Below are positions 3,464 to 53,096 of a stretch of 64,000 nt of DNA, one piece after another. Source of the stretch: Octopus sinensis (taxonomy: Eukaryota); assembly GCF_006345805.1 (NCBI RefSeq), contig NC_043008.1:32922001-32986000 (forward strand). Direction: 5' to 3'. Position 1 is the first letter of the stretch; each line of letters begins with the position of its first letter. The position numbers were made by a program, and so were the translations under genes. The notes beneath the pieces were generated by a model. The model ran no database searches and was not told the origin of the DNA. It worked only from the letters and a program-made list of their open reading frames with translations.

Positions 3464-3505
3464 GTCGGCATCAGTGCAGTCAAGCTCATCTCATGCATCT
3501 CTCAG
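3464..3505 (+). CDS. Candidate upstream exon (phase 2/2), SASVQSSSHASL(R)
   Basis: ttgtattcAG|GTCGGCATC...CTCTCAG|GTttgt; 42 nt; the AG end joins A of 14794 to give ...HASLRFRHAAF. Acceptor ambiguous (open in-frame alternatives start at 3429 and 3448). No recognisable homology. Confidence 0.4.
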
Positions 3506-14793: not shown

Positions 14794-14885
14794 ATTCCGT
14801 CACGCTGCCTTCAATGTACTTCTTGGGCGAAGGAAAACTACCCGACGCCACAGTGCCGGACAAATCGAACATGTTTATATTGGCG
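14794..14885 (+). CDS. Exon: helical linker before CBD1, (R)[30 protein letters not shown]
   Basis: Long pyrimidine tract then ccatcAG|; donor G|GTaact; GC-richer than flanks; R-x2-A-x5-G-x6-RH spacing matches NCX1 RIQATRLMTGAGNILKRH. Confidence 0.8.
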
Positions 14886-17509: not shown

Positions 17510-17511
17510 AG

Positions 17512-19702: not shown

Positions 19703-22700
19703 TCACTATTTGATTGTTTGAAGAACAAAGAGAGTCTTCCTTCCTCCTGGCAGCCGTTTTATGGAATTCTTAGAGGAATTCTTTCCTATGGAATATGTTA
19801 CCTTACCATGATATGAAGAAATAGTTTGTTGTTTTAGACTGGCCCTTTCATGAAGAGACCCTCAATGGTGTTGTACCTATGGTGCTATATTTATTGTTAC
19901 AAGTGGGTTGGCTGAATCATTAAAGCATCAAATAAATGTCTTGCAGTATTTAATTACAGCCCTTTCTTTCTTGGGTTCAATTCCCACCTAGATTGATTTT
20001 TCTCCTCATTCTTCTGGGGTTGATAAAATAAGTACCAGTGAAGATACTTATTTTATTGACTTTCCTCACAAAAACTTGGCCATGTGTCTATATATGAAGT
20101 CAGTATTACTGTTTTTTTTTTTTTTCTTCAATAGAAAAAGTTTCTGCACAAAGAATTAAAATAGTTATTGTTTGGGAGAATGCATGGGAATTAATTGAAC
20201 TGATGATGAAGGAGTTCACAATATACAAACACTATATGACAAGCACTGCGGGCGCATGCACGCACATACATATACATGTATATACACACACACTCACACA
20301 CATGCATATGTATAAACACAAGAAAGAAAACAATTATAACTAAGCCCATAAGAATTAACTCACTGCTTCTAAATGTAGCTAGCTTCAAAAATGGAATACA
20401 AAATAGCTGCACCAACCCATTGCTGCTAGAGCCAATAAGCTTATAATGTACTTAACAGTAAGTAAAACACACATTAGACAAAACATCACCATCACCTTTA
20501 ACATGGCATAGATTCATAAACTAATTGCTTTTTTAACTTGCCAGCATCTTGATTGTATTGTGCATTGTTTAATTATTACTATTATTATTCAGAATACTAT
20601 AGTTTATATGAAACATTCTGAAAAAGAGTAACAGAGTTTAAGAAAGCCTCTACAGGGGGCAAGTTGGAAATAGGGGATTGAAAATTGATACAAAGCAAGT
20701 ACAATGGTTTATACCCTATTACCTTTTATTTCAATTTTTATTTATTGTAAAATAATGTTGTTTTAATCTGTGCAAAACAGAGCTAACTTGTCATACATTT
20801 TTTTGATAATGGACTTGTAAATTCAAAATATCAAAATAAAAGGTAAAAGTGTAATCCATTGTTCTTGTTTGGTTTTGATTGTGTTCTCTTTTCATTCCTT
20901 TAATTCTGACTTGCGACTTGCATTGTAATGGCTTTCTCAAACACTATTACTTTATTTTTATGGATTGGCAGAATTGTTAAAACGTCTAGCTGTAATTGTT
21001 CCAGCTCTTTATGTTCTAATATCAATTTCCACCGAGGTCAACTTTGCCTTTCATCCTACTGAGGTTGATGAAATAAAGTGCCAGTCAAGTACTGGGGTTG
21101 ATATAATCAACTTTTCTCTTCCCTTTCACCTAATGTTTGGCCTTTTACCTATGTCAGAAATCATTATTAATATTTCTTTGTTTTGCTATCCAATATACTT
21201 TTTTGTGATTGTTTTTGTACTGTTATGTATATGTATATATATATATTTGCCATACATGTGTTGGCAGTGTTTTTGTGTCTTATCATTGTTATTTTGTTTG
21301 TGCCACAAAGGCCATTCACATAAATGGTTAGATCTCATGTACATGAAAGGATGGTCACCTAACAAAGGAGTGAGTTCAGGTAAGCTATGTCACCAAAATA
21401 CTTTAGGCACCATCAACGTTGTAGAATTGAACACGGAACCAACCCTTTATATCTATCTCTTTCATAAGTAAATTAATTAATTAATTACTCTATCAGTCAA
21501 ACAATTAGTCAAATAGTAATACTATCTATCTATCTGTATCTATTCATCTATTTTATTTCTCTCTTGACCTCAAGGTATTATATAGAAGGATGGTGAAAAG
21601 ACAAATGTAAGAATCTTGGTAGAGATGAAATATCAGTTAATATCTGCTACAGGCACTCAGTTGTGTTTTTAGACAAGATACATAAGTATCTCAGATAAAC
21701 AGTAGTCAAATATTTGCCATATGTTCTGTATTGACATTATTCTAAGACCAGTGGATGATGACTAAATCAATAAACTGCATACCATAACAGTCTCAGCTGT
21801 TGCTTTGTATTGATACCAAAGCACTCAAGTCTCATTGATTCAACCAAACTAGCAGTAAATTGGTACCATGAGATAGATACTAGTTTTTGTAGTTAAGATG
21901 GGAACATTGCCTATTTAAAGAGTTCTTTACTAGCTTACTATGTAATATCAAAGTCATCCAATAAGGATCTGTTTCAAAAAAGAACAATGAAAAATATTCC
22001 AGTCTATTCATTTCAAGAAAATTCTATAAACACTTTTCTCCAAGATCACCAGACCCTGAGATTAAATCACTGACTAATTTATCTAAATTGTAATGTCACT
22101 TGGATGAAGCTCTGATTTTCTGTTGATTTGGACAGTTGTATAGAAGTATTTATCTGTGTATCACACCATGATGATTATGATGCAGGATTAGTTGGAATGG
22201 TAGAAGTTGAAATAATAATTTTTATATCTAATTGGTCAAATTCAAAACTGTTAATCTGGTGATATATTTATCACACATATTGCCTGAATGGTTCAACTAC
22301 TTCTGGTACTTAGATGTAGTAAGATTTAAGGTCCTGATAACAACTAATGCTAATTACAGCATGCTAGTCATTATATTTTTGATTGGCCTTTCTTTACTTG
22401 ATTAGAAGTTCATGTTGAGCTAAAGACCATAATCTTTTTTATTATTCCTTTACAAATTTCAAAGAGCGGAGTAAGTTTTAAGCCATAAAGGAAAAAGTGT
22501 TCTAGTGTCTTTGATAGAACCCATTGTCAGGGGGAAAGAAGTGCCCATTGTTAAAGCATTCTGCATTACTTTTTACTGTTACAAAACATCACTACTTTAC
22601 TCAAGCTCAGCTGTTTTACCCTCTCAGCTAAAGGACTTGAAAAAAATCTTTAATTGTGAATGTTTCAGTGCAATTTACTCTGTACAATAATATTTACACT

Positions 22701-26300: not shown

Positions 26301-26566
26301 GTTTATGTGTTTCTGTGTTTCTTGTGTGCTGTGAACTACATTTTAATAACTTTCCCTGTTTTAAATCACACGTATCACTATTTTCCTTTTCCAACCTTGC
26401 ACGTTTGAAGATGATTGTCAAGGTAAGATCTGTGACTATGAAGCACAGAATCATTGTTTTTTAATTCATCTCTCTCGCTCTCTCGCTCTCTCTTCTCTCT
26501 CTCTCTTTCTCTCTCCTCATATGCATTAATATCTATATATGTGCATATGTGGTATATATATATATT

Positions 26567-28490: not shown

Positions 28491-28500
28491 GATATATATG

Positions 28501-28545
<45 letters not shown>

Positions 28546-36515: not shown

Positions 36516-39500
36516 TATATATACATATATATTACGGAGATGTACTCGCATAGCAAGTAATTTGATCTGAGATCGTGTGCTGAAACGAAAACAATTGCAG
36601 TATGGAAGGTGTTTGTAAGCCATTTAAGAAACACACAAAAGCCGTTCGATTCACTTCAACATTTAAGTTAATTTGTCAAAATATTTTCGGCGCTAAAATC
36701 AGTGAACAGGTCGCAGATTTTAGCGACGAAAATATTTTGACAAATTAAACTTAAGTGTTGAAGTGAATTGAACGGCTTTTGTGTGTTTCTTAAATGGCTT
36801 ACAAACACCTTCCACGCTGCAATTGTTATATATATATAATGTGCATACAAATACACACACACATGTATTTATAAACATACAATAAATACATACATACAAA
36901 CATAGAAAGAAATAACCATTTCATACTCAGAGGACTGTGCTAAGCTCCAACAACTGGTGACTGTGTGGTTTTGAAACTTCCCATTACCATAATAATTGGT
37001 TACATTATATACATAAGTTCTGTTCTTTTCAGAGGCACATAATAGATTGTAATTATATACATAAACATATATAAGCATAATTGAATATATATTGATATGA
37101 CACAATGATTGAGAAACCCAGTTGCAGCTTGTAATGTTCATGTTGTGTTGTTACTCTTGATTATGTTCTGACTATGAACTTCATTTACATTTATATTTAA
37201 TAGCTATATTCGTGTCTGTCTAAATTATCCTACAGTCATCATTAATTAATTGTTTTATAAAATTTATTGTTGTCTAGAAGCTCTTCTTTTTAAACACATC
37301 TGTCCATTACTGACTGATTGGTAATTAATTTAAATACATCTGTTCTCTCATAGGTTACTTCCTGTTCGCTTCTGAAAAGTACAGCATTTTTGAAGGTGGT
37401 GGTGTACTGGAAGTTGATGTCCTTTTTGCGAGAGCTTTACAGTAAGTAACAGCTTTTAACTCTTAATGCAGGACTTAATCAAGGGCATTTATATTCTCTT
37501 GAAGTGAGTGAACAAAAAGATGGTAGTATGGGATGTGATCTCTTGTATTGCTTTCTATAAATAAATACAATAAAATCCTAATGACTTTCTTTCTTGTTCT
37601 CCTCCTTGTTATCCACATATAAAGTAAAACCAAACTATATATAACTTTTCAAAGTATACTAGCATCTCATATGATTGGAATTTTTTATAATTTCAACAGT
37701 TTGTCACAGAAGATGTGGGAATGATTTGGTCAATATTTCATGGGTCTTGTATTGGGAAAAGGTTAGAAACTATCAACTTAGAACTCATTGAGTCATTGGC
37801 TGTCATTCGTATTGGAGGACAAAAGCCTGTTTGATGCCAACTCATATAGATTATGCCTGTACCATTTAGCTTTGTATCTGTTGTCAATGAGAGCTGTCTG
37901 GAATTATATTATAAGATTTCTAGAGATTTCTAAACTACTGAGTTCAAGATGTTTGCCAATGTAAACCAAGCTATTTTGAATATTTATTAGATCAAGAAAT
38001 ATTGAATTTGATATAGCCTTGCATCCCATCTGGATGAGGAGCAGTTATGTCTTATTCTATTAATACTGTAATAGAACATATGTAACTATTTAATCAAAAA
38101 TCATCTGGCACTTAGAGACTAAGTGCAATAGAAGAGTGTAGCTATTCATTCAAGTGTGTACTAACTGTCCTCAAGAGAATATTTATTGGCAATTTCAGGA
38201 TTATGTCTCAGCAAACAATAAAAGTTTGTCTAATATAAAGGATTCTTGTTAGTGTCATCTTCCTTCAAGATGTACTGGACCAGATGGAATTAAAAGTCAA
38301 TGCTATAGTGCCAGTAATGGAATGTGAACCATGGTTTCATCTGCCAATGGCCCTGTATTTTATTGGCTCAGATAGCTTTAACCCTACATACTGGTATAGA
38401 ATAAATTATTGCATGTATTCTCTTCTGCCCTTCTGTCATACTTTCATATCTCTCAATACTATACCTCATTCGGTTGAGGTATCTTGTCTTTCAAGTCCTT
38501 AGCAACTTCATTAGTATTGGTTCCACAAAATAAAGCAAACAGAAAACTCTGTAAAGTGGTTGGTATTAGGAAGGGCATCCAGTTGTAGAAACCATGTCAA
38601 AGCAAATACTGGATCTCAATGTAGTCCCTTTAGCTCATCAATTTTTGTTGAACCATCCAACCCATGCCAGCATGGAAAACGAGATGTCAAGCAGTGATGG
38701 TGATAATGACAGGAATGCATTGGAGAAACATAATCCTTTGCGTTGTCCACAGTAAATCACTGCTACACAGTGGATGTAATGCAGAAAGTTGATACTGAAA
38801 CTGAACGGGAATTTTAATTCATCCTGTAAACAAATAAAACTATAAATCTTAATTATCATGCTGATACACTAACATCAGAATTAACTACAGAAGAGTGATA
38901 AATGGGGATTAGGAAATATTTTTAGAAGTCAACAAGCAATACTTTCAGACAAAACAAGCAAAGGAGGCATCTTCAAACATTTCTGGAATCTTAGTCATTA
39001 GCAGAAGTATATTTTTCATCATTGTTTGTTGGTAATTTTGTAACTAGTTTACTATATAGACATGTTTGTAAAATTTTGGTAGTGGGAAATGTGATTAATT
39101 GATAATTTAATTACAAAAGTGTGCTAACAATATATTTTATAATAAAAAGGTTGCTTCCAATGTTTTCAACATCTAAAATCACCAGAGAAGATTTAAACAC
39201 AGTGACTAAGAAACAATATTATGGGTTAGCTAATATTAGATGATTAAATTAAATTACATTTTTTTATATTTACAAACATTTCTATTTGTAAGTTAGTTAC
39301 TGCATGAAAAGCAAGTGCCAGCAAGAATTATAATCCTGCTGATTATGACTAAAAAAGCAGAAACATTTGAAGTTGTCTCTCTTGCTTGCTCAACCTTTGA
39401 ATATTATTAGCTGACACCCTAATATTTTTCATACTTATGTATTTAACCCTGATTGGGTTATTTCTGTTATTTAACATATTGGATTTAATCAAACCCACCT

Positions 39501-40381
39501 TTTTATTAAATAGGGTAATGTTTTTATTCCACTGATCTCATCCACTGCTGAAATAAACTACTGATGGTTGGTTGGTTGGTTGGCTGACTGGCTGGCTGGC
39601 TGGCTGGCTGGTTGGTTGGCTGGTTGGTTGGTTGGTTGGTTGGTTGGTTGGTTTGTAGTGCTATAAAAACTATCAGTGAGGCTGAATAATCACATTTTTA
39701 TCTCTTTCTCTTCCAGAATTCCTGATAGAAAAAAAGCCGTAAGTCTTGACTATTCATACTTCTATTTCATTAAAGTTTATATGTTTTACTTTACTTTAAA
39801 AAAAAACATTTTTTTAATGCAATCAAAAGCTATCAAATTAGGTCTAACTAATTGGGGAGCACCTAAATTTTGAATAAGATGTATTCTACAATGTTTCTCA
39901 AGAGAGCAATTTCAAATTCAACTGTGGACACAATTAAAGTCCGTATATAAAGTCATTTAAAACCCTAAAGAAATCATTTTATTTGCTAGGTACTGTTAAC
40001 GCTCCTCATTGCAATTCTGCCTGGCCTTGGAGGGGAATTAACAAACAATTTTGTAAGACGTATCATATAAGTGAATTTAAAGACCAAGTTTTTGGTGATA
40101 ACAGTGCTAGTAATGGTGATGGAAAATCACAACTATTATTAATATTGACTTTCAGGATTGAAAAAATATGTACCAGTCAAATATTGGGGTTGTTGCAATC
40201 AACTATACACCCTACCCAAAAAAATTCAGGCTTTGTGCCTATATCTTTTATTTTTTACTTGTTTCAGTCATTAGACTGTGGTGATACTGGGGCACTGCCT
40301 TGAAGAATTTTTAGTCAAATGAATTGACTCCAGTACTGTTTTTTGTTAAGATGGATGGTATTGTTTTTTGTACAATTTCAA

Positions 40382-40430
<49 letters not shown>

Positions 40431-40657
40431 GTATATATGTATATATGGTTCTAGTTCAAGCTTATAGTATTTTTTACGCAAAGTTTAATGCCTCTGTAAT
40501 TGAAGATATTTCAAACAGAATTAGTTAATGTTATGAAAACCTATTTTGTCTGAAGTTTATCAATATGGGGTTCAACTAATGTTGATTTCAGTTTGTCTTG
40601 AGAATGGATAGTAGTATATGTGCATCTAGTTCTTCAGGAATTATGTAAAGCATGCAC

Positions 40658-40717
<60 letters not shown>

Positions 40718-41114
40718 TGAGTATATATGTGGTGAAGCAATTTTTTTGCTGAACCCTAATTATAATTAGACTCATAATTATAAAAATTATTGTTTAAGTT
40801 TACTGATTATGGTCCTTTTAACATGCCGAAGCTACTTGGTAGAATTATTAATTATTAATTAATTAATTAATTTTACCCTTTATTATTATTGATAATATAT
40901 ATATATATCTTTTACTTTTTCAGTCATTTGACTCTATTACACTGGGGCGTTGCCTTGAGATTTTAGCTGAATGTATGAACCATAGTACTTATTTTTTTTT
41001 AAAGCTTTATACTTATTCTATTGGTCTCTTTTGCTGAACTGCTAAGTTACGGGGATATAAACACATCCACACTGATTGTCAAGTGGTAGTGAGGGTACAA
41101 ACACAGACACAAAG

Positions 41115-41145
<31 letters not shown>

Positions 41146-41289
41146 AATATATATATATATATACATATATACAATAGGCTTCTTACATCTGTACACATAT
41201 ACTAATGCACTTTCAGACATGGAGGTTGATATATATTGACTGAATTTAAGAATTCAATTATTAACATACTAAACTTCAATACATCATTG

Positions 41290-41340
<51 letters not shown>

Positions 41341-44300
41341 TGGCTGTGAAGATGCATGGCTCAGTGGTTGGAGCGTCGATCTTACGATCATGCAGTTGTG
41401 AGCTTGAATCCCAGACTGGGCTGCATGTTGTGTTCTTGAGCAAGACACTTTATTTCATGTTGCTCCAGTTCACTCAGCTGTAGAAATGAGTTGTGGGATC
41501 ACATATGCCAAGCTGTATCGGCCTTTGCCTTTCCCTTGGATAACACTGGTGGCATGGAGAGAGGAGGCCGGTATGCATGGACGACTGCTGGCTTCTATAA
41601 ACAACCTTACCTGGACTTGTGCCTGGGAGGGTAACTTTCTAGGTGCAATCACATGGTCTGTGTCGTGACCAAAGGGGGTCTCAGATGTATAAGTGGTTAA
41701 TATGAATGTCCAGAGCAACATACTTAGAATAGTAAAAAGGCAAAGACTTCACAAATGTTTCATAATTCCATTCTAAATTCTACAGCTGTTTAAATGGTTA
41801 AAATGCTAACATCATCATTCATAAATTTACTTAATGTATAAAACTACATTTTTAATTTAACTGAGATGGATAACCATTCCTTCTTATTTACATAAATTAA
41901 GCATGTATTTTTATATATAAGTAATTAATTATATTATTGATGATATTTGTGTTTTATCTGTTAGAATAAAATTACAAAGCATCTGTGAAATTTTCACTTT
42001 TTAACCACTTTCACTCTCTTTCACTGACTGTCCATTTCTCTCTCACTTTCTCTCTCCCTATGTATATATACTTGATATATGTATTTTTCTGTATATTTTA
42101 GCAATGTTCCAGTTAGCTTTTTAGTGATACCAATTATAAAATATTGTCCAGACATTACTATTAGACAAGCTTCTCTCTTTAGTGTTTTAGAAGATGACCT
42201 TTAAGCCAAGTATTGAGAAGAAGACCCATCAAACCAAGTAAAATTACAGTCGTGGCAGATACTGGTGTCAAGCTGGTGGCACATCAAAGCACCCAATACA
42301 CTCTCAGAGTGGTTGGCATTAGGAAGGACATCCAGCCATAGAAACCATGCCAAATCAGACTGGAGTTTGGTGCAGTCTTCCAGCTTGCCAGCCCTGGTCA
42401 AACCATCTAAGCCATGACAGCATGGACAATGGACATTGAACGATGATGATGATAATGATGATGATAATGATGATATATATAGTAAAGTTCTTTTATTTTC
42501 TTGAAGCTGATGATTCACTCAATCACTACTTTGAGTTTGTTCAATTTATGAAAGATGCATTGAATGCACGTGTGTGTGTGTGTGTATGCGCACACATGCA
42601 TGTAATTTCATTTATTCATGTACAGGCATATTTTATTTCTTTGTTCTGTCTTCCTTTGAAATTTGTCTCATCATATAGCGAAGCAATGATATTGTAGTAC
42701 AGAATTCAACCAGTGCTGATGCCATCCCAAACTGTCACCAGAAGAAATCACCAAAATCAACGGATAGCATCAACCTTGGCACTGGTTTGGTTTCTGTCGA
42801 TTATGAAACGCGTGAAAGTTCTGCAAAAGCAGGAGTAGATTTCCGACCAATCACTGGAACATTGGTAAGTCTGAAATTATAGTTTTTTTTTTGTCTGTTT
42901 GTTTTTTGAAATAGTTAGCTCTCTAACTGCTAAATTAAATTTCATGGTTATTTCAGTAACGATGTTAAATATTGTGGATGTATTTGATTTCTGCAACAAA
43001 GGAATTCATTTATTTTATTTATATTGGAAATACTTTAAACTCATGACCATAAACTACCAAATCATTCATCAATGTGCCTTCCCTTGAGCCCTTTGTGGTT
43101 GGTTGATCATCTAGAAATGGTAGCGGAATTTCTATCTAAAAGAAGAAAATATTGGAGAATATATTCCTACACACACTATGGTTTGATAAAAAACATAATA
43201 ATCATGACTAGCTTACCTTTGATCATAGGTCCAACCCATCAGAAGTTTAACCTATCACTCAGCCAATCAAGGGTGCATCCCACTGATTATTTTTGTTTAC
43301 TTCTAGAACATCAGCCCCACATCAAACCTTCATACTAACCTAGAGCTAAGTGAGAACAATATTTATTTATACCAGGCTGATGTTTTTCTACATTTGATTA
43401 TTTTTAATGAAGGACTTAGTACAGTAGGCCTGACTTATGCAGACACTGAAACATTCTTGGTTCCCTTACCAAGAAATCAGCCAGGAGAGTTTCAGTATTT
43501 CTCCTAAATGCCAGAGACAGGACATAAACTCAACTCTTTAAACTGGGATCCTGATATTTATACAATTTTCACAACCCTTTAACCATTAGAAGAGTACCTA
43601 CAGTCACAGTTGCATTAAACAACTCTCATATATTACACACAATTTTCATCCTTCCATAACTCATGTCGTCTATTAAATCACATATTGAACAAAGCCACAA
43701 CCCCTCTCAGGCCGATCCTATTGGTTCTTCATTAATATTTTTATAAATAATTCAACTCCAACACCTTTATTACAATAGCTGCTCACATTTTCAATATCTC
43801 TAACTTGTTTACAGATGACAAATATCTGCTTTAAACAAATATGTGTGTGTGAGAGAGAGAGAGAAACAGACAGACAGACAGACAGATAGACAGAGGTGGA
43901 GGGATGAGAGAGAATATTTGAAGTTATAATAGATTTTAAACAGTAAATGTGAGATACTATAAAATTCAATAAAGATTTACATTAACATAGACTACAAAAC
44001 AATTTACATTTTTAGTAATCTGAATGAAACAAATCTGAATTATTTTCTTTAACAGGTATTTCGTGAAGATGAATACAGAAAGCAGATAAGTGTAGATATT
44101 CTCAGTGATGGATATACCACCAACACAATTGATTTCTTCCTGATACTAAAGAATCCTTCTGGCAATGCAGGTCTCGGGGATCCTTCTGTGGCTCATATCG
44201 TCGTTATTGGTCGACATGGTAAGAATGTTATGATTTATTTAAATATTAATCTGCATTTATTTCTTTTTATCATTCTCCAAATTTTTGCCTTTCGTAATGA

Positions 44301-46695
44301 TGGCTTCTTAGTGCTACTTTGTCAGTCCCACTTGACATTGCAGTGAGAATGGCCAATTAAAAATGAGGACAGAGATGTCTCATTCTCAGTAGCATCAATA
44401 CTAGGGATCAACAAGGTGGGATACTCATAGACTATAGAGACACCTTCCTCCTCTAGTACAAAGCTGGTTAAATGCTCTGAGCTGTAATTCCAACCAACTG
44501 AATAGACCTAAAGAAAAGGGGAAACCATTGGTGAGATTAGAATGAGCAAGAAGGAGCAAGAAAATAATTATAATAAATGGGACCAGATTAAATTAAAGCC
44601 TAATTATTTCATATGCACAGCATTTCTGCAGATGGGGAACCTGAACTTTTTTTAATAATCTTTCCCCATCCTCTCAATATCAGGTTTCCTGGGCTGGTGT
44701 TGAATTAAATATTGGTGAAACTTCCCTTCAAGTACCAGACTTGATAACTCTGATGGTGCCTATCTCCTTCCTAGGAAGTAGATAGACACCATCAGTTCTG
44801 AATTCAAAACTTACTTTGATCAACTTTGCCTTTCATTCCTCCAGGACTGGTAAAACAATATACCAGCATGAGGGTCAATGATTCTTTATATTCTGAATTT
44901 AAATGCTGCTGTGGCCAACCACCTTTCATCCTTTCCAGGTTAATGAAATAAGGTATTGGTGTTGTTGTAATCACTTAAAATTTCTGGCCTTATGTCAGAT
45001 TTTGAAACCATTGTTATGATTTTTTAAATTCTTTTATTTATTAGAGCCAGGAGAATTCTTGTTTGAATCAGCATATTGCCATGCAGATATGAAAAAAGGG
45101 AGTGTTACAGCAATTGTTCATCGTGAAGGTGGTTTTGACAGCACTGTCTCAGTGCAGTATCAAACGATGTAAGTTGTTAAATGCTAATATATTATAAATT
45201 AAGCCTTAAAAACCATTTCTTTATTTTTTAATAATGTCCTAATCATAAAATTTTATTTAATCGTTATTTCCATTTTAATGCTGTTGATGCTGTGGCAGTT
45301 ATTGTTTATCAATCAGGTCAGATTTTAAGAACTTGACCTATGATCAAAAGCAATCCTTTACTTTCCTACCAGATGTATTCCTAATAGGTGGGTATGGTAT
45401 AGTATGGTGATTGAAGTGTTGAATCTTGAATAATTGGATAGGAAAATGATAAAGATCCCTCCCAAGTATTATAGCCTCATAGGGTCAGTTTCCCAGTTTC
45501 TGTGTGGCATATATATTCCCCACGTCGACATGATGTCAGCCCATCACAGGATTACTTGTTTTTGCCAGCTGAGTGCACAGGAGCAACATGAAATGAAGTG
45601 TTTTGCTCAAGAACATAATGTGTCACCTGGTCCAAGAATTGAAACTACGACCTTATGATCATGAGTCCAACACCCTAACCACTAAGCCACACACCTCTAC
45701 TGAATAATTGAATTATATACTAATTAATGTCTACTGTTCTTCAAGAGGCTAAAAATATGCTAATGTACAATTGTTGATTCCTTTAGCTATACATGAATTA
45801 GGGAGCTTGTTTCCATGATAGTTGCTAGGTTTCTCTAGATCATGATACTCCAAACATTAGGAGAAATTCACATGAATCAATTTATATGCCTCTGCAGAAA
45901 TATTGCAAGCTTGTATTATTGTGGTTTTGGCCATGGAATTACCAATAGTGTGATTATATGTAGAGGTGTGTGCATCATTGTCAAAGTTGACATTGATGCA
46001 TTAATCACGGCATGAGATAAAGCTGGTTGTGTATATTACAACAAATGCAAACCCACAAACATTTAACAACCAATTTTATTAAGAGAAGGCTAAGCATGTC
46101 TGCATACATAAATTATCAAATCCTCACTGGTAATGAAACTAGACTGTAGAGATCAACTTAACTGTATTTATTTGGTCATTAGTTATCTCGAAAGTCAGCC
46201 GAAATTTGTTAAAGTATTTTTTCTTGATTGCTTAGTGACAGTTATCAACAGTGATGTGGAATGACTTGGGCACCAAGATGCTTAACTAGTGAAAAAGGGT
46301 ATGAATCTCGACATTTGAGATGATTTTCATGAAATGACTTCAGACTAACTGGTCTATTTTTAGGTTGTTCACATAAATTTGGTATGGTTCATTTATGACA
46401 GTAAACTAGCAATTTTATGTTTGAGGTTCAAATCCCAACAAAAACATTTCTTTAACAAATTTTCCTATGAAATGAAATAAAATAAAATAAAGTAAAATAT
46501 TTACATTTCTACATTTAAGCATAAATATTATTCTTTATTTTACTTTATTTTGGTGTATATTATTTCATTCCATTCCATTTCATTTCATTTCTTCGGAAAT
46601 TTGAAAACTTTCTGAACCTGTATATAAATAAACTAAAGAACAATAACTTTATTATCACCAATATACTATTCTATACACCACCAAAAAAGTATTAT

Positions 46696-46765
<70 letters not shown>

Positions 46766-48211
46766 GTTCAAGTATCATGATAGCATGAAACTATTAATAG
46801 CTCTTTCAAATGTGCATTTAAATTGATATTTATTTCTCATTGGATGGACTTTTATTGTTGATTCTACCTCTATTGGATCTTTGCGTGCGTGTGTGTGTAA
46901 ATGCTTATTGGCAAAGTCATTAGAGTGTTGGACCAACTGCTTCATGGTATTTCTTCTAACTCCCTGCAAGTTGAATCCAAGTACCACCAAAGACAACTTG
47001 GCCTTTCATCCTTTTAGATTCTTCAAGCCAAGCCAACTGGCAGGAGACCAAGAGATAAATCAAGAAGAAAATGGATAAATAACATTCATAGTATCAGTTA
47101 GTCATGCTTAGGAATCCAGTCTGAGAGTCTAATGATGGTTACTTCTGACAGTATTCTATGGAGGAGGTGCTGGAGGATTGTACACACCCCTCCTACAAAC
47201 CACAGGACTAGTACAAGGAGAATATTGATGGATGGGATTAATGAATAAAGTATCATCTTTAGCAGATGGTTGTTAGACAGGATGCTTTACTGTGTATCTC
47301 TTCCATGTGTCCTGAATTCAGATTCCACCTCCTGTCACTGGATTAAAAAAAAACACAACACTTGTACAGTTGCAGCTGACAGATAGTATCAGCAAAGACA
47401 AAAAGCCAATTGAAACATAGTTTCTAAGGTTCAACTAGAAGATCAGTTACCACCATAAATGCAAATAAAGACATATCCTTCATATCAATCAAAAAATTAT
47501 TCGTGTCTCTTGTAAACATAAAGAATAAAGCATTTTTAGTTCTAAATAATATTCTAGTTAATGGCAAGATTACTATATTTTTTGACCCAAGAGCACAACA
47601 GATGCCCAGCAGCTTCTGTGATTGATATTGATGTACTTCTGTTATATTAATAGTTGTGTCTATAATAAATTTGAAATCACATAGGAAGATATAACTTCAT
47701 ACAAAATACATAAAGTACATTTAAACAACCAATTTATAGTTTTATCTAATGTTAAGTAATTTAATATATATGTTCCCAACCGTGATTCCATTACTAATTT
47801 TTTTTTCCTTCGTTCATTTTTATGACTGATAATGGGAGAATATCAACGATAGTCAATATATTTGATAGCTCTGTATGTATGGATGCAAATACATGAATAT
47901 GTATGAACACGCACACACATATACATGTTTATATGTGTATATATCTATGTATGTATATGCATATGTGTGTGTGTATACACACACAGGCGGCGAGCTGGCA
48001 GAAACGTTTGCACGCTGGGCGAAATGCATAACCGTATTTCGCCTGTCGTTACATTCTGAGTTCAAATTTCACTGAGGTCGACTTTGCCTCTCATCCTTTC
48101 AGGGTCGATAAATTATGTACCAGTTACGCACTGGGGTCAATGTAATCGACTTAATCCGTTCGTCTGTCCTTGTTTGTCCCCTCTGTATTTAGCCCCTTGT
48201 GGGTAGTAAAG

Positions 48212-48247
<36 letters not shown>

Positions 48248-48591
48248 CAGGAGTGGCTATGTGGTAAGAAGCTTGCTTACCGACCCCATGGTTCCAGGTT
48301 CAGTTCCACTGTATGACACCTTGGACAAGTATCTTCTACTATAGCCTAGGCAGACCAAAGCCTTGTGAGTAGGTTTGGTAGATAGAAATTGAAAGTAGCC
48401 CATCATATATATATATAATATATATATATATATATAGTGCAGGAGTGGCTATGTGGTAAGAAGCTTGCTTACCGACCCCATGGTTCCAGGTTCAGTTCCA
48501 CTGTATGACACCTTGGACAAGTATCTTCTACTATAGCCTAGGCAGACCAAAGCCTTGTGAGTAGGTTTGGTAGATAGAAATTGAAAGTAGC

Positions 48592-48628
<37 letters not shown>

Positions 48629-49127
48629 CGGGAAGCTTTATGAAAATAGACAAAAGACGAAGGCAGGTGGAAAACAAACAAACAATTGTATTAGTATGGC
48701 GCTCAGGAAATATAAATAAAACAAGTCTTTAACGTTTCGAGCCTACGCTCTTCAACAGAAAGATACACAGAGAGAAAAAAAACACAGAAAGAAGAAGAGA
48801 AAAAAAGGAGAGAAAAAAAAAGGAGAGAAAAAAATATATATATATTATATATCTTTGTATGTATGTTTATATGTCTATATTATACTAGTCTACAGCAATT
48901 TGGCTTTTATGAAGGTGTACATGGTTTTAGGGTAATATGAGGACTTTGCTCATTTGACACTAGAAGCCACAAATACAAAACTACCCATTTCGACATTTCA
49001 TGAAAATGACAGACGGTTTGTCCAACAACATTCTGTTTGCATAAACTGAAGTAACATTACAAGACTTTTTAAATGTGTACAAAATGGCATTTTTATGAAG
49101 TACCATCTTATCAGCTGTAATCAATTC

Positions 49128-49166
<39 letters not shown>

Positions 49167-52100
49167 GGGATGAATCCATCCTAGTACATCCCAAAGCTAA
49201 CTTCAGAATTTGAATTCAAAGCATAGAGTGCTGAAGCAAAATTCTGTCTGAAGACTTAAAGACTCGGCTAATTCACTGCATCCTTTTTAGGGTATCTATG
49301 GCAATATTATCTGATATGTTTTCTTTCAAGACAGTAGTGTGTAATTTGAGAGAAACTTGATTGCTGTTTCTAGCAAATCAAACAAACAGAAAGAGGCTTC
49401 ATGATTAGCATTTTTTGTGATCTAGATCTGATTCTGGGCTGCAGTCATTCCACCTCATTTATGCTATTAATTTAATACTCCCAAGGTTACTAGTTGAGTG
49501 GTTACAGTGGCAGACAAAATGCTGTATTCTTTATGCTCTGAGTTCAAATCCCACTGAGGCCACCTTTGCCTTTTATCTTTCCAAGGTCAATAAAATAAAG
49601 TACCAACCAAATATTGTGACTACTGGTACTAATTAACCCCCTCCCCTCAAAATTTATGGGAGACCATTAATTAGTACTCCCAGAAAATATCAACTATGAT
49701 GCAATAGGAGTATTTATTCATTTAAACCATTCTAAAACCTTTCTTTTAACAGGGACGGTACAGCATGTGGAGGCAATGAGTTGGGTTCAGGAGTTGATTA
49801 CATTGCAACTAAGGATGTTTTGACATTTGCTGATGGAGAAATAACAAAAGCTATCACTATCGATGTCAATATGGATGTGAAGGTAAAGGAACATATTCTG
49901 CATTTGATTGTTTAATTGATTTATTGTTCAGTTCTATATTTAAGAGTGGAGGCACGTGGCTTAGTGGTTAGGGTGTCAGCACCATGATCGTAAGATTGTG
50001 GTTTTGATTCCTGGAACAGGCGACGCGTTGTGTTCTTGAGCAAAACACTTCATTTCACATTGCTCCAGTCCACTCAGTGGCAAAAATGAGTAACGCTGTG
50101 ATGGACTGGCATTCCATCCAGCTGGGGAACACATACACCATTGAAACCGGGAAACCAGGCCCATGAGCCTGGCTAGGCTTTAAAAGGGCTCATTTGCAGA
50201 TATTTGCTATATTTAAGAGATGAGGAATTATGTACCTTATTTACATTATTTATATTTGATGGATATTTGTCCTCATCTTGTTTGTTGTTAACACAACGTT
50301 TCAGCTGATATACCCTCCAGCCTTCATCAGGTGTCTTTGGGGATATTTCAAACCTGGGTTCTCATTCCTAAGGTATTTTTTGATGTTATTATTATTATTA
50401 TTCAGGTCACTGCTTGTAATTAAACTTGGAATCTTGGGGTTAGTAGCCCATGCATTTAACCACTACGCCATACGCCCAGATTCAAAATTTTCCCAAGACA
50501 CCTGATGAAGGCTGGAGAGTATATCAGCCGAAAAGTTTTGTTAACAGCAAACAAGATGAGAACAAATATCCATCAAATGTAAATAATGTAAATAATGTGA
50601 TTTATTGTTGTTGTTGTTTTTCCTCTCATCATCATCAGGGCAACTCAAATCAAGTAGATTTATGATTAAAATTATTCTATCTGTAACCACCCTGTCTTTT
50701 ACTTATGTAAAAACTAAAGGAAACATTATCTAATGTGGATCTCAACCATTTTCTAGTAATGGACCTCCATTGATTACATTTTTAATTGTGTGGACCCTCA
50801 TAGCCATTCAGTGTTTAAAAAAATCCTATTGTATTTTTATAATCATATATTATTGGGAATTGTATTTAAAAATTGTTAAAATATTTTGTGTATTGTAGAA
50901 GTTAATTGCATATAAATTTTAGCAAATTTTATATGGACCCTCAAAGGTCATGTGGACTCCATTTGAGCACCACTGCCCTTGGGTGAGATTTGAGGAAGAC
51001 AGTTGCCATTTCTAGCTGGTCAAGTGAAATTATTGTTGTTATTATTGGTGGTGTTGGTGATGGTGGTGGCGGTGGTGGTGGCGGTGGTGGTGGCGGTTAC
51101 AGTGGTGGTAGTAGTGGCGGTGGTGATGGTGGCAGTGGTGGCAGTGGTGGCAGCAGTGGTGGTGGTGGTGGCGGTGGTGGCAGCTGTGGTGGTAGCTGTG
51201 GTGGTGGTGGTGGTGGTGACATTGCTTGTTTAATCCCAGATCAAACCTGATTGAGCAGACAGACCCATGAACAAGGTAATTTCAATCATAGATGCCTTGT
51301 CCATTATTTTTTTTTTTTAAATCATAGTGTATCTAAGACTACATCATCCCACTGAAAGAGTAATATCTCTAAGCCAGTCAAGAGATAATGTAGAAGCTCT
51401 TCATAGTTCCATGTTGCAGTTATTTATGGTTAATATTAATGTTGCTCAGCATGGCCTTCAGCCCTCAACCCTGTTGGAGTCATCTTGTACATTTTTAGAC
51501 ATGATGGAACCACCCCTCTTCCAGAAAGACAGACAAACAGAAATAATAATTGTATATGTACATGACTAATACTTAATTTGTCGACCCTAAAAGGATATAA
51601 GGTAGAGTTGACATAAACATTATTTGAACTCAGAGCACAGAGAGCTGGAATCAATACCACAAGACAATTTGTCTAATGTTCTAGCAACTCAGCCAACTTG
51701 CTGTTTTATTAATAATTTTATAGCACATATATATATATATACGTATATATATATACATATATAATATATATAGGTGCAGGAGTGGTTGTTTGGAAAGAAA
51801 CTTGCTTCTCAGTCACACAGTTCCAGGTTCAGTCCCACTGTGTGGGACCTTGGGCAAGTGCCTCATCTTCTGACACCTAATAAAAAGTGCACCAGGCTGA
51901 TCACATTACTGCAAAATCTGACATTGTTTCAGGCAGACAAAGCTAATTTCCTTGAACATTTCCTAATGTTCATCATTTTCAGTTAAAGACAAAGAGACAA
52001 TCCATGCAGTGGAACACTCCTCCTCACTGACTCCAAAGAAAGCCAAGGTCATTTCATGTGCAGGGAATGTGATGGCCTCAGTTTTTTAGGATGCAAAAGG

Positions 52101-53096
52101 CATTGTGTTTATTGACCATCTTCAAAAGGGCCATCAATGGAGTGTACTATGTCAACTTGCTGAGGCAGTTATAAAAGGCCAACTAACGAAAGGTGACTTG
52201 TTTCATCAGGACAATGCTCCAGCACACAAATCCTTGCTTTCAATAGCTGCTGTGTGTGACTGTGGTTTTGAACTGATTGATCATACTCCCTATTTTCCAT
52301 TTTGGCCCCATCTGATATCATCAGATGAAAAAGCATTTGGCTGGGAATGAGTATCACAGTGATGATGACATCATATATGGTGTTAATATCTTCTTTGACA
52401 ATCAGGATCAAAGCTTCTTTCCCAATGGTAACCAAACACTGCAACACCAATGGAAGAAGTGTGAGGACCACGGGATGATACTATGGTAAAAAAATAAACC
52501 TCATTTGATCGCATTTCATGAGAGTATCTTGGTCAGCCTATGAACTTTTTAGCTGACTCTTGTACATATTTACATATATCTATATCTGCATGCATGGAAA
52601 GAGAGCGAGGAGATAGAGAAGAGAGAGAGAGTCAATGAAATGATCCTTGAAACTATGCTTTTATATATTAATATGATTACATATATTTTCCGTGTGTATA
52701 TGATACACATATATATTATACATATATGTACCATTTACACACAGAAATTACAGCTACCTTGTATTTCTATGTCAGGAAATATTTAGACTCTATTCCTGTA
52801 TTGAGTTCTTTTGTTAGAAGATGTTACCTATTGTTTTTAATTTCATTTTAACAACACTTCATATATATGTATGTATGTATGTATGTATACACACACATGC
52901 ACACACACACACACACATGTATACATTCTTATGTATGTGTATATATATATACACACACATGCACATATCTATACATTTCATTTTCTTTCTTTCCTCTCAT
53001 TAAAGATATGCAAAAATTTCATAATTGTTCTGAGTAATCCTGACAATGGAGCCAGAATCGGTGAACGCAGTGCTGTTGTATGCTTCATGAATAACG
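14794..53096 (+). CDS. Partial multi-exon gene: divergent Na+/Ca2+ exchanger (SLC8/NCX)-like cytoplasmic loop with two tandem Calx-beta domains; N- and C-terminal parts not found in window
   Basis: Eight AG..GT exons with phase chain 2/1, 1/2, 2/0, 0/0, 0/1, 1/2, 2/0, 0/1 give 896 nt without stop. Calx-beta motifs: [52 protein letters not shown] (domain 1); [51 protein letters not shown] (domain 2). NCX assignment is inference from the upstream helix and the CBD1-CBD2 tandem; no TM segments seen, so another Calx-beta protein is not excluded. Confidence 0.8.
17000..19220. repeat. ~2.2-kb compound (TA)n array with recurring TAGTATATAA units, grading into TATGTACATTATATATAAAAAA units
   Basis: Directly visible. 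Confidence 0.95.
24381..25642 (+). mobile_element. Full-length mariner (Tc1/mariner) relic, 1262 bp
   Basis: TA-flanked TIRs TTGGGTCATCTCATAAATAATG / CATTATTTATAGGATGACTCGA; broken transposase from ATG 24564 ([15 protein letters not shown]), [37 protein letters not shown]. Confidence 0.95.
26785..26995. repeat. Inverted repeat with internal CCCGTT duplications
   Basis: TTATTTAAAAGCAGCAGAAATTCAACAAA...GTTCCCGTTCGTTGGACAG versus CTGTCCAACGAACGGGAAC...TTTGTTGAATTTCTGCTGCTTTTAAATAA. Confidence 0.9.
27000..28870. repeat. ~1.9-kb degenerate (TA)n/(TATG)n array
   Basis: Directly visible; source of the many Y/I-rich spurious ORFs. Confidence 0.95.
29347..29660 (+). mobile_element. 3' end of an R4/Dong-like (RLE) non-LTR retrotransposon inside an (AAT)n tract
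   Basis: 29348-29464 reads [38 protein letters not shown], matching the [14 protein letters not shown]-terminus of R4/Dong-type ORFs; AAT repeats on both sides. Confidence 0.7.
31244..31640 (+). mobile_element. SINE family A (GGCTGTGTGG.AAGAAGCTTGCTT head, internal TA/TG microsatellite, CCAGCATGGCC.CAGTC.AATGACTGAAACAA tail)
   Basis: Recurring family: + ~8894-9160, 10020-10170, 11455-11600, 12925-13140, 48245-48404, 48437-48596, 51774-51860; - ~40905-41200, 58600-58800, 63210-63520. Confidence 0.8.
33525..33748. mobile_element. Copy of the piggyBac-like MITE
   Basis: CCCTTTAGCAATC...AAATGCTAAAGGGTTAA; internal sequence shared with 59144-59371. Confidence 0.65.
36590..36827. repeat. Near-perfect inverted repeat, ~111-bp arms, 15-bp loop
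   Basis: 36590-36700 is the reverse complement of 36716-36827 with few mismatches. Confidence 0.95.
37354..37441 (+). CDS. Exon: start of Calx-beta 1, [29 protein letters not shown](Q)
   Basis: tctctcatAG| ... CA|GTaagt; resembles Calx-beta strands A-B (cf. NCX1 FFEQGTYQCLENCGTVALTIIRR). Confidence 0.9.
39566..39652. repeat. (TGGT/TGGC)n tetranucleotide tract ~65 bp upstream of the microexon
   Basis: Directly visible. Confidence 0.9.
39717..39738 (+). CDS. 22-nt microexon, (Q)IPDRKKA
   Basis: tctctttctcttccAG|AATTCCTGATAGAAAAAAAGCC|GTaagt; the only exon I found that converts the phase-2 end of 37441 to the phase-0 start of 42679. Confidence 0.8.
41348..41682 (+). mobile_element. tRNA-derived SINE
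   Basis: TGGCTCAGTGGTTGGAGC...TTGAATCCC head; tail ...GTGCAATCACATGGTC..GACCAAAGGGGG as in the 9501-9972 copy. Confidence 0.8.
42200..42470 (+). repeat. Dispersed RTE-tail-like repeat ending in (GAT)n
   Basis: GTGGTTGGCATTAGGAAGG.CATCCAGC...CAAACC.TC.AACCCATG.CAGCATGG..AA.GGACATT.AA.GATGATG; also ~11040-11220, 28975-29175, 30925-31040 (-), 38545-38700, 61856-62025. Confidence 0.75.
42679..42864 (+). CDS. Exon: insertion plus CBD1 strands C-D, RSND...[28 protein letters not shown]
   Basis: Pyrimidine tract then catatAG|; TTG|GTaagt; VDYET..SAKAG.DF...GTL is a hallmark Calx-beta motif. The 5' boundary is less certain than the 3'. Confidence 0.9.
44056..44218 (+). CDS. Exon: CBD1 strands [56 protein letters not shown]
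   Basis: ttctttaacAG| ... CATG|GTaag; Calx-beta C-terminal pattern (F..L.NP...LG.PS.A.V.I). Confidence 0.93.
45045..45168 (+). CDS. Exon: start of Calx-beta 2, [41 protein letters not shown](M)
   Basis: ttttatttattAG| ... AT|GTaagt; cf. NCX1 HAGIFTFEEPVTHVSESIGIMEVKVLRTSGARGNVIVPYKT. Confidence 0.93.
47986..48215 (+). mobile_element. SINE family B, well-preserved copy
   Basis: GGCGGCGAGCTGGCAGAA...TTCTGAGTTCAAAT...GAGGTCGACTTTGCCTCTCATCCTTT..GGGTCGATAAATTA.GTACCAG. Further copies: + ~12720-12890, 15897-16110, 16135-16345, 21025-21150, 24085-24300, 44800-45010, 49510-49660; - ~11860-12030, 51545-51700, 53735-53910, 58345-58570, 60235-60420. Confidence 0.85.
49753..49882 (+). CDS. Exon: CBD2 middle, [43 protein letters not shown]
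   Basis: ttcttttaacAG| ... AAG|GTaaag; cf. NCX1 EGTARGGGEDF...LEFQNDEIVKTISV. Confidence 0.93.
49948..50195 (+). mobile_element. tRNA-derived SINE; second copy at ~62341-62577
   Basis: TGGCTTAGTGGTTAGGGTG...GGTTTTGATTCC head; near-identical body in the 62341 copy; fragments at ~45480-45700 (-), 62095-62280 and 63939-64000. Confidence 0.85.
50243..50589. repeat. Inverted repeat, ~105-bp arms, ~135-bp spacer (MITE-like)
   Basis: ACATTATTTATATTTGATGGATATTTGTCCTCATCTTG...CCTTCATCAGGTGTCTT versus AAGACACCTGATGAAGG...CAAGATGAGAACAAATATCCATCAAATGTAAATAATGT. Confidence 0.9.
51040..51220. repeat. (GGT/GGC)n trinucleotide tract
   Basis: Directly visible; the most GC-rich stretch of the window. Confidence 0.9.
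51858..52562 (+). mobile_element. Mariner relic, 3' half with right TIR
   Basis: [44 protein letters not shown]; ends GGTCAGCCTATGAACTTTTTAGCTGACTCTTG-TA. Same family as 54406-55669. Confidence 0.9.
53006..53096 (+). CDS. Exon: end of CBD2, [30 protein letters not shown]
   Basis: Pyrimidine tract then taaAG|; G|GTaagt; F.I.LSNP...A.IGE.S pattern. Confidence 0.9.

What the first reader, a model, noticed from the sequence alone, without database searches (positions are those of the whole stretch)
37354..53096. NCX-like Calx-beta tandem that has lost most of its Ca2+-binding acids in both domains
Seen: CBD1 E-F loop reads [14 protein letters not shown] where NCX1 has GIIDDDIFEEDENF. In this gap-free alignment D446, D448, E451 and E454 (canine numbering, from memory) become S, G, T and I, and only D447 remains. 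The G-strand end VVIGRHEPG replaces TIFDDDHAG, so all three Asp are gone and one is now Arg. In CBD2, ADMKKG replaces VSESIG, DVNMDVKICKNF replaces KVIDDEEYEKNKTF, and CFMNN replaces IIEES. Only the structural E of SIFE and the D of AG.DF / G.DY survive. Known: these acids form the regulatory Ca2+ sensors of NCX. Inference: an exchanger paralog (or Calx-beta scaffold) whose loop no longer senses Ca2+, i.e. constitutive or regulated by something else. This is the most promising candidate for new biology in the window.
Basis: partly seen in the sequence, partly recalled or inferred. Interest (0 to 1): 0.75.

Follow-up and report, generated by a model that had tools for sequence, protein, structure and literature searches.

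The report
Octopus Na/Ca exchanger without calcium-sensor acids
The region holds the regulatory-loop exons of an already annotated octopus sodium/calcium exchanger gene whose two "calcium-sensor" domains are intact and conserved but lack most calcium-binding acids, so this exchanger is probably not switched by internal calcium the way known ones are.

Summary
Window 37354-53096 (+) holds seven AG/GT-bounded exons that encode two tandem Calx-beta domains (Pfam E=1.5e-32). With three upstream exons they match residues 314-629 of XP_036363729.1, "sodium/calcium exchanger 2-like isoform X4" of Octopus sinensis, exactly. That protein has two Na_Ca_ex membrane repeats, the NCX1 ion-site motifs, and a predicted fold that best matches human NCX1. 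The transmembrane exons lie outside the window. The gene is not the classical squid-type exchanger. It belongs to a second, uncharacterised NCX clade found in molluscs, annelids, brachiopods, nemerteans, echinoderms, hemichordates and amphioxus. All 117 non-cephalopod members keep DDD498-500 in CBD1 (most also keep E451), and none has the CBD2 acid cluster. Only the three cephalopod sequences have GRH for DDD and an acid-poor E-F loop. E385, D421 and D447 equivalents survive. CBD1 diverged fast on the cephalopod stem and was then held constant (dN/dS about 0.03 between octopods; intact cuttlefish-like mRNA). This looks like a functional shift, not decay. Loss of Ca2+ sensing is inferred and has not been measured. 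It is a new variant of a known kind, of moderate interest.

The parts
3464..3505 (+). Cassette exon (42 nt, RSASVQSSSSHASL) in the cytoplasmic loop. It is skipped in isoforms X3 and X6.
   Evidence: Exact match to P0151. AG/GT splice sites. Isoform alignment.
14794..14885 (+). Loop exon (R)[30 protein letters not shown], conserved across the clade (ARARFRHAAV motif).
   Evidence: Weak hit with the family HMM.
21311..21379 (+). Cassette exon (69 nt, [23 protein letters not shown]), phase 1 to phase 1. It is present in isoforms X1-X3 and in the cuttlefish gene model.
   Evidence: P0232 sequence.
26411..26422 (+). 12-nt micro-exon (DDCQ), alternatively included.
37354..37441 (+). CBD1 exon 1: strands [30 protein letters not shown]. 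It keeps the E385 equivalent (SIFE).
39717..39738 (+). 22-nt micro-exon (Q)IPDRKKA at the start of the disordered B-C loop insertion of CBD1.
   Evidence: Model pLDDT is below 50 for residues 390-433.
42679..42864 (+). CBD1 exon 2: the rest of the B-C insertion plus strands C-D ([27 protein letters not shown]). It keeps the D421 equivalent (VDF).
44056..44218 (+). CBD1 exon 3: strands E-G. The E-F loop reads [14 protein letters not shown] where NCX1 has IIDDDIFEEDENF. The G-strand end reads IGRH where NCX1 has FDDD.
   Evidence: The exon is 93.9% identical with no indels to a second octopod, against 79-83% for the flanking introns. dN 0.008, dS 0.286.
45045..45168 (+). CBD2 exon 1: [19 protein letters not shown]... 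E516 is replaced by M, and the R532 equivalent is D.
49753..49882 (+). CBD2 exon 2: (M)[44 protein letters not shown]552 is kept, the acid cluster 577-582 is gone, and position 564 is D.
53006..53096 (+). CBD2 exon 3: [30 protein letters not shown]. The G-strand end reads MNN where CBD1-type domains have DDD and NCX1-CBD2 has E647/E648.

Best explanation
Window 3464-53096 (+) carries the cytoplasmic regulatory-loop exons of an octopus plasma-membrane Na+/Ca2+ exchanger gene (XP_036363729.1 and its isoforms). The gene is the cephalopod ortholog of a second bilaterian NCX clade, distinct from the classical NCX1/CALX/NCX-SQ1 line.

Shown: the transport core has the NCX1 ion-site motifs. The CBD1-CBD2 tandem is retained, is predicted to fold as two beta-sandwiches, and is under strong purifying selection. 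CBD2 lacks the Ca2+-site acids in the whole clade. CBD1 lost six of its nine NCX1-type acidic ligand positions on the cephalopod stem, including both triple-Asp motifs (three of these were already non-acidic in the clade).

Inferred: CBD12 no longer binds regulatory Ca2+ at micromolar affinity. The exchanger is then not gated by cytosolic Ca2+ through the Ca3-Ca4 latch. CBD12 persists as a Ca2+-independent structural or regulatory module. The CBD1-CBD2 interface may be held by direct salt bridges, because D499 became R while the partner positions 532 and 564 are D. Control may have moved to the alternatively spliced, disordered loop segments.
For: - The exon set equals the annotated protein exactly.
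- Pfam finds Calx-beta twice, and PF01699 is recorded for P0151 and its relatives.
- The motifs ALGSSAPE, GSAAFN, ALGTSLPD and GSNSVN match NCX1.
- The AF2 model gives CBD pLDDT of about 70-90, and its best fold hits are NCX1 structures 8sgj and 9iv8 at E about 1e-45.
- Identity to NCX1 is 49-52% in the TM regions and 31% in CBD12. NCX-SQ1 is 58% identical overall and keeps its DDD motifs (PMC2217150).
- In the site table of 120 clade members, DDD498-500 is invariant in all 117 non-cephalopods and is GRH only in Octopus and in two cuttlefish-type sequences. CBD2 acids are absent everywhere.
- Cephalopod CBD1 is 44-49% identical to outgroup members, against 57-74% for other molluscs. TM regions and CBD2 drop only a few points.
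- Octopus and cuttlefish are nonetheless 75-93% identical in CBD1 and 85% in CBD2. Exon C has dN/dS of about 0.03 between two octopods.
- The cuttlefish-like ortholog is an intact 875-aa ORF on 4.4-4.5 kb contigs, listed in 26 blocks of the Logan read-run assemblies. An ORF this long with no introns implies these are mRNA.
- The window holds no alternative acid-bearing CBD exon. The six annotated isoforms differ only upstream of CBD1.
- The literature names D499/D500 with R532 as the Ca2+-dependent interdomain latch, and E516/D552/D578/E648/K585 as the CBD2 site.
Against: - There is no binding or transport measurement.
- E385, D421 and D447 equivalents remain, plus a D at position 455, so a residual low-affinity site cannot be excluded.
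- The salt-bridge idea rests on sequence covariation in one lineage only. I could not inspect the model coordinates.
- The TM exons and the protein's full architecture come from the annotated relative, not from the window.
- Coleoid A-to-I RNA editing could in principle recode some Asn or Lys codons to Asp or Glu. This was not examined.
- I did not retrieve a canonical octopus NCX sequence. Paralogy rests on the squid literature and on identity levels.
Confidence: 0.6

Rival explanations
1. Ca2+ sensing is kept in weakened or relocated form. The remaining E385, D421 and D447 equivalents, D455 and backbone carbonyls form one low-affinity site, or acids next to the old sites (the D of HAD in CBD2, or NNDE after strand G) take over.
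For: Three ligand positions and several neighbouring acids persist. The CBD fold is intact. NCX splice variants show that one to three substitutions can change the number of sites.
Against: D498-500, E451 and E454 are all gone, and D499/D500 are named as Ca3-Ca4 ligands in the high-affinity latch. An Arg now sits in the pocket. CBD2 lacks E516 and the E647/E648 equivalents, as does the non-binding CALX-CBD2.
Confidence: 0.2
2. The acid-free pocket has been turned into a sensor for something else, for example protons through the new His, Mg2+, a lipid or a partner protein. Regulation is then switched rather than lost.
For: There was a CBD1-specific burst of change followed by strong conservation. 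The changes at 498-500 and 564 are coordinated. Conserved cassette exons sit next to CBD1.
Against: No ligand is indicated by any search here. The pattern is equally explained by a Ca2+-independent latch.
Confidence: 0.12
3. The gene is a decaying or non-functional paralog, and the acid losses are neutral degeneration.
For: Cephalopod sequences are the most divergent in the clade. On et al. 2008 proposed that low-identity invertebrate NCX-like genes lack NCX function.
Against: All 11 exons are open with AG/GT sites. dN/dS is about 0.03. CBDs are 75-93% conserved between octopus and cuttlefish while dS is saturated. An intact mRNA-length ORF occurs in many read-run assemblies. The ion-site motifs are identical to NCX1.
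Confidence: 0.03
4. The two Calx-beta domains belong to a non-exchanger protein, such as an ADGRV1-, FRAS- or FREM-like protein or some other Calx-beta scaffold.
For: No Na_Ca_ex exon lies in the window. The exon-C search hit many multi-repeat Calx-beta proteins.
Against: The exons are an exact substring of a protein with two Na_Ca_ex repeats. Only two Calx-beta domains exist in the window and in the protein.
Confidence: 0.01

Closest known systems
Mammalian NCX1 (SLC8A1)
   Same: Ten-helix core with two alpha-repeats and identical ion-site motifs. It also has a beta-hairpin after TM1 and a large loop with a CBD1-CBD2 tandem joined by a three-residue linker. It is the best structural match.
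   Different: Identity is only 49-52% in the TM regions and 31% in CBD12. There is a 45-residue disordered insertion in the CBD1 B-C loop and only a short basic segment where XIP sits. D446, D448, E451, E454, D498-500, E516, the 577-582 acid cluster and the E647/E648 equivalents are all non-acidic. R532 is D.
Drosophila CALX
   Same: It is an NCX whose CBD2 does not bind Ca2+. The whole clade found here has a similarly acid-poor CBD2.
   Different: CALX-CBD1 binds four Ca2+ and mediates inhibition. The cephalopod CBD1 lacks most of those ligands.
Squid NCX-SQ1 (classical cephalopod exchanger)
   Same: Same animal group, same protein family and the same domain order.
   Different: NCX-SQ1 is 58% identical to NCX1, keeps both DDD motifs and is Ca2+-regulated. 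The gene here is a different, more distant paralog with neither DDD motif.
Non-cephalopod members of the same clade (e.g. Haliotis XP 'sodium/calcium exchanger 2-like', oyster, Lingula, sea urchin 'magnesium/proton exchanger 2', amphioxus 'SLC8A3')
   Same: They are 45-51% identical over the full length. They share the same architecture, the B-C insertion, the acid-poor CBD2, and D at position 532.
   Different: They keep E385, D421, D447, E451, D453 and an invariant DDD498-500 in CBD1. Cephalopods have S/T-D/E-G...T/I...GRH, and D instead of H at position 564.
NCX1 exon-B and NCX3 exon-A splice forms
   Same: In these forms, natural substitutions at a few positions abolish Ca2+ binding to CBD2.
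   Different: There the change is made by alternative splicing and leaves the CBD1 primary sensor intact. Here it is germline-fixed and affects CBD1.

Membership tests
NCX / SLC8 branch of the Ca2+/cation antiporter superfamily | Two Na_Ca_ex (PF01699) membrane repeats | tested here: met
   PF01699 is recorded for P0151. Two stretches were found in the ortholog P0006. These exons lie outside the window.
NCX / SLC8 branch of the Ca2+/cation antiporter superfamily | Alpha-repeat ion-coordinating signature as in NCX1 (ALGSSAPE, GSAAFN, ALGTSxPD, GSNxVN) | tested here: met
   All four motifs are present in P0151 and P0006, and in 111 of 117 full-length clade members.
NCX / SLC8 branch of the Ca2+/cation antiporter superfamily | Two tandem Calx-beta domains in the large cytoplasmic loop | tested here: met
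   Pfam E=1.5e-32 in two stretches. The best sequence match among solved structures is NCX1 CBD12, 3us9. The model shows two beta-sandwiches.
NCX / SLC8 branch of the Ca2+/cation antiporter superfamily | Overall fold of a eukaryotic NCX | tested here: met
   The Foldseek top hits are human NCX1 cryo-EM structures, E=9.5e-46.
NCX / SLC8 branch of the Ca2+/cation antiporter superfamily | Na+/Ca2+ exchange activity | not testable with these tools
   Needs heterologous expression and flux or current measurement.
Ca2+-regulated NCX (NCX1-3, NCX-SQ1, CALX type) | CBD1 acidic ligands, including both triple-Asp motifs (D446-448, D498-500), said to be perfectly conserved in all NCX (PMC2217150) | tested here: not met
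   The motifs read SDG and GRH. Only the E385, D421 and D447 equivalents remain.
Ca2+-regulated NCX (NCX1-3, NCX-SQ1, CALX type) | CBD2 site residues E516, D552, D578, E648 and K585 | tested here: not met
   The residues are M, D, an ambiguous D or N, N, and F or K. The whole clade lacks E516 and the G-strand acids. CALX also fails this feature.
Ca2+-regulated NCX (NCX1-3, NCX-SQ1, CALX type) | XIP autoinhibitory segment after TM5 | tested here: inconclusive
   Only a short basic stretch, GWWICKRKKQ, follows TM5. No model or assay for XIP function was available.
Classical invertebrate NCX orthologs (NCX-SQ1 line) | At least about 55% identity to vertebrate NCX | tested here: not met
   49-52% in the TM regions and 31% in CBD12, against 58% overall for NCX-SQ1.
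Multi-Calx-beta extracellular proteins (ADGRV1, FRAS/FREM) | Long arrays of Calx-beta repeats without Na_Ca_ex repeats | tested here: not met
   Only two Calx-beta domains are present. They are flanked by Na_Ca_ex repeats in the protein.

The most novel reading that the evidence does not exclude
In coleoid cephalopods, the CBD12 tandem of this second NCX paralog was converted from a Ca2+-operated latch into a permanently latched module. The Ca3-Ca4 pocket was filled by Arg/His (DDD>GRH) paired with Asp at positions 532 and 564 of CBD2. The result would be the first natural eukaryotic NCX that keeps its regulatory domains but is not gated by cytosolic Ca2+. Control would pass to spliced and phosphorylatable disordered loops.
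Probability: 0.3. Interest if true: 0.65.

Novelty: new variant of a known kind. Interest (0 to 1): 0.5.

Why it matters
Allosteric activation by cytosolic Ca2+ through CBD1 is treated as a universal feature of eukaryotic NCX. [quoted passage not shown]

A conserved, expressed exchanger that keeps the CBD scaffold but lacks the ligands is a natural experiment on what the CBDs do apart from binding Ca2+. Orthologs in abalone, oyster and Lingula still carry DDD and make a ready comparison set.

[quoted passage not shown] A second NCX clade is present across lophotrochozoans and invertebrate deuterostomes, and it has never been characterised functionally.

Tried and rejected
- The spliced 258-aa query in the word-indexed protein search found nothing at E<=0.001.
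I ran it with exon C alone, and this found the orthologs.
- A domain HMM built from the two window domains, and later from 120 clade members, found no further Calx-beta exon and no TM exon on either strand. This rules out a multi-repeat protein. It also rules out mutually exclusive CBD exons within the window.
- Pfam scans of concatenated + strand open segments from 13-41.6 kb and 48.9-64 kb found only mariner transposase relics.
- My first exon-B models, with acceptors at 42684, 42714 or 42768, were wrong. The annotated protein shows a micro-exon at 39717-39738 and an exon-B start at 42679.
- I first mis-assigned D421 to the EDG motif. Recounting shows it is the D of SDY, which is retained here.
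- Paper searches found no description of this clade or of an NCX with an acid-free CBD1. Two searches failed on syntax.
- Model coordinates are not exposed, so I could not measure the proposed Arg-Asp contacts.
- I did not fetch a canonical octopus NCX, because any search seeded with NCX1 would return only vertebrate hits in the rows shown.
Full report
**What is in the sequence**

The window is AT-rich animal DNA (about 32% GC), full of TA/CA microsatellites, SINEs and mariner relics. They lie in six open segments bounded by consensus AG acceptors and GT donors whose phases fit each other. The spliced product scores E=1.5e-32 against Pfam Calx-beta in two stretches. Its best match among solved structures is the NCX1 CBD12 tandem, 3us9 (E=5e-15), followed by full-length NCX1 and Drosophila CALX CBD12.

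**Which gene it is**

- The word-indexed protein search found nothing with the spliced query.
- The exhaustive search accepts only contiguous window translations, so I ran it with exon C alone. Most hits were multi-repeat Calx-beta proteins.
- The closest hits were an 875-aa protein with two stretches (P0006, 58% identity) and short fragments at 80% and 95% identity.
- P0006 has two Na_Ca_ex repeats and two Calx-beta domains.
- Searching with P0006 returned P0151, [quoted passage not shown] (XP_036363729.1).
- The P0151 sequence contains the window's exons letter for letter. Ten exons between 3464 and 53096 splice into 316 residues identical to P0151 from SASVQ... to ...CFMNN.
- This corrected my first model. 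There is a 22-nt micro-exon at 39717-39738, and exon B begins at 42679.
- A search with an HMM of 120 clade members over all six-frame segments found only these exons. The transmembrane exons therefore lie outside the window. That is also why the Pfam scans of the flanks found only Mos1-type transposase pieces.

**It is an exchanger, but not the classical one**

- P0151 and P0006 carry the four alpha-repeat signatures exactly as in human NCX1: ALGSSAPE, GSAAFN, ALGTSxPD and GSNxVN.
- An AlphaFold2 model of P0151, built with 32 clade sequences, gives confident TM helices and two beta-sandwich CBDs at pLDDT of about 70-90.
- The model is disordered at residues 231-360, 390-433 (an insertion in the CBD1 B-C loop) and 630-646.
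- Its best Foldseek hits are human NCX1 cryo-EM structures at E=9.5e-46, followed by the CBD12, CBD1 and CBD2 crystal structures.
- Identity to human NCX1 is only 49% (TM1-5), 52% (TM6-10) and 31% (CBD12).
- The cloned squid exchanger NCX-SQ1 is 58% identical to NCX1, keeps the regulatory Ca2+ site and is Ca2+-regulated. [quoted passage not shown]
- The window gene is therefore a different paralog.
- Its relatives at 45-51% identity come from gastropods, bivalves, annelids, a brachiopod, nemerteans, echinoderms, hemichordates and amphioxus. They carry mixed automatic names: NCX1/2/3-like, "magnesium/proton exchanger 2", "SLC8A3".
[quoted passage not shown] It dismissed low-identity sea-urchin copies as probably non-functional, lineage-specific duplicates (PMC2408596; repeated in PMC3355786).

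**The calcium sites**

I aligned 120 clade members with the NCX1 CBD12 sequence taken from the tool alignments and numbered the columns from E385.

CBD1 positions:

| Sequence | 385 | 421 | 446 | 447 | 448 | 451 | 453 | 454 | 455 | 498-500 |
|---|---|---|---|---|---|---|---|---|---|---|
| NCX1 | E | D | D | D | D | E | D | E | N | DDD |
| Clade majority | E | D | N | D | N | E | D | C/V | D | DDD |
| Octopus | E | D | S | D | G | T | T | I | D | GRH |
| Cuttlefish-type | E | D | T | E | G | I | T | V | D | GRH |

- DDD498-500 is invariant in all 117 non-cephalopod sequences. Only the three cephalopod sequences lack it.
- A few other members, including a second Babylonia paralog, have eroded E-F loops but keep DDD.

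CBD2 positions:

| Sequence | 516 | 552 | 577 | 578 | 579 | 580 | 582 | 585 |
|---|---|---|---|---|---|---|---|---|
| NCX1 | E | D | D | D | E | E | E | K |
| Clade majority | L | D | K | E/D | A | K | S | F |
| Octopus | M | D | M | D | V | K | C | F |

- The end of CBD2 strand G reads MNN where CBD1-type domains have DDD.
- The acid-poor CBD2 is therefore ancestral to the clade, as in CALX, whose CBD2 does not bind Ca2+ (PMC4746289).
- The cephalopod-specific event is the loss in CBD1.
- The reviews confirm which residues matter. D499 and D500 coordinate Ca3-Ca4 and bridge to R532 of CBD2. In CBD2, K585 (the homolog of E454) salt-bridges E516, D552, D578 and E648.

**Decay or functional shift?**

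- All eleven exons are open with AG/GT sites.
- A 1.66-kb genomic contig from another octopod aligns to exon C at 93.9% with no indels. The flanking introns align at 79-83% with many indels.
- Nine of the ten exon differences are synonymous: dN 0.008, dS 0.286. O. bimaculoides carries the same V>I change.
- Between octopus and the cuttlefish-type ortholog, synonymous sites are saturated and dN is 0.18.
- In that comparison, protein identity is 75-93% in the CBD1 core and 85% in CBD2. That is as high as in the TM domains, at 74-80%.
- The cuttlefish-type protein is an uninterrupted 875-aa ORF on 4.4-4.5 kb contigs listed in 26 blocks of the Logan read-run assemblies. Contigs of this kind must be mRNA.
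- A relative-rate comparison shows the divergence is domain-specific. Against five outgroup members, other molluscs keep 57-74% identity in CBD1. Cephalopods keep 44-49%. In the TM regions and CBD2 the deficit is only a few points.
- A burst of change in CBD1 on the cephalopod stem, followed by tight constraint, indicates a change of function, not a loss of the gene.

**How it probably works**

- The transport core should work as in NCX1. This is inferred from the identical ion-site motifs.
- The Ca3-Ca4 pocket has lost D498-500, E451 and E454 and has gained an Arg. I therefore infer that CBD1 no longer binds Ca2+ at physiological concentrations.
- Since CBD2 has no site either, the exchanger would not be activated or inhibited allosterically by cytosolic Ca2+.
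- The interface positions changed together. The clade has D at 532, where NCX1 has R, and H at 564. Cephalopods changed D499 to R and H564 to D.
- This reciprocal pattern suggests that direct salt bridges replace the Ca2+-mediated latch between the domains. This is a hypothesis only. It comes from one lineage, and I could not read the model coordinates.
- Regulation may have moved to the disordered loop. Three cassette exons (3464-3505, 21311-21379, 26411-26422) generate the six annotated isoforms. The 23-residue cassette is conserved in the cuttlefish gene model.
- None of these exons touches the former Ca2+ sites. The window contains no alternative copy of a CBD exon.

**Rivals**

- Residual low-affinity binding through the three surviving ligands is possible (0.2).
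- Re-use of the pocket for another ligand is possible but nothing supports it (0.12).
- Pseudogene status and a non-exchanger identity are effectively excluded.

**Verdict**

The exchanger identity is shown. "Lost in both domains" is really an old CBD2 state plus a cephalopod CBD1 loss. The loss of Ca2+ sensing remains an inference. The gene model is already in public annotation, but neither the clade nor the acid-free CBD1 appears in the literature I could search. I rate it a new variant of a known kind, interest about 0.5.

Noticed in passing
window 3464-3505, 21311-21379, 26411-26422: Three cassette exons (42, 69 and 12 nt) upstream of CBD1 account for O. sinensis isoforms X1-X6. The 69-nt exon ([23 protein letters not shown]) is conserved in the Acanthosepion gene model.
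   Followed up: yes
O. bimaculoides proteins P0270, P0272 and P0280: In O. bimaculoides the same gene is annotated as two separate models: LOC106880178 'uncharacterized protein' for the N-terminal half and XP_014785509.1 for the C-terminal half. The break falls at the CBD1 insertion. This is probably an annotation artefact.
   Followed up: partly
window 60638-61447 (-): A 269-aa open reading frame with a Mos1/mariner transposase domain (PF01359, E=3.5e-23). It looks like the least degraded of several mariner copies.
   Followed up: partly
window about 24500-25650 (+) and 52090-52486 (+): Broken mariner transposase relics. The first has HTH_48 plus Transposase_1. The second lies inside the intron between CBD2 exons 2 and 3, and Pfam did not confirm it; I identified it by eye only.
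   Followed up: partly
window 16996-19221 and 26997-28866: Two (TA)n-rich arrays of about 2 kb inside introns, which pull local GC down to 14-19%.
   Followed up: no
window 48214-48627: A 192-bp unit (a TA run plus what looks like a SINE) is repeated 2.2 times in tandem at 99% identity, which points to a recent local duplication. Similar SINE copies recur in several introns, for example near 41340-41480 and 49976-50164.
   Followed up: no
window 50990-51250 (+): A GGN/GTN low-complexity run that reads as poly-Gly or poly-Val in different frames. It is intronic, with no sign of coding.
   Followed up: no
clade alignment, P0260 (Babylonia areolata second copy) and 7 other sequences: Some non-cephalopod members also have an eroded CBD1 E-F loop (for example ILQGKQQGCDVDF) while keeping DDD498-500. 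Partial loss of CBD1 ligands has therefore happened more than once in this clade.
   Followed up: partly
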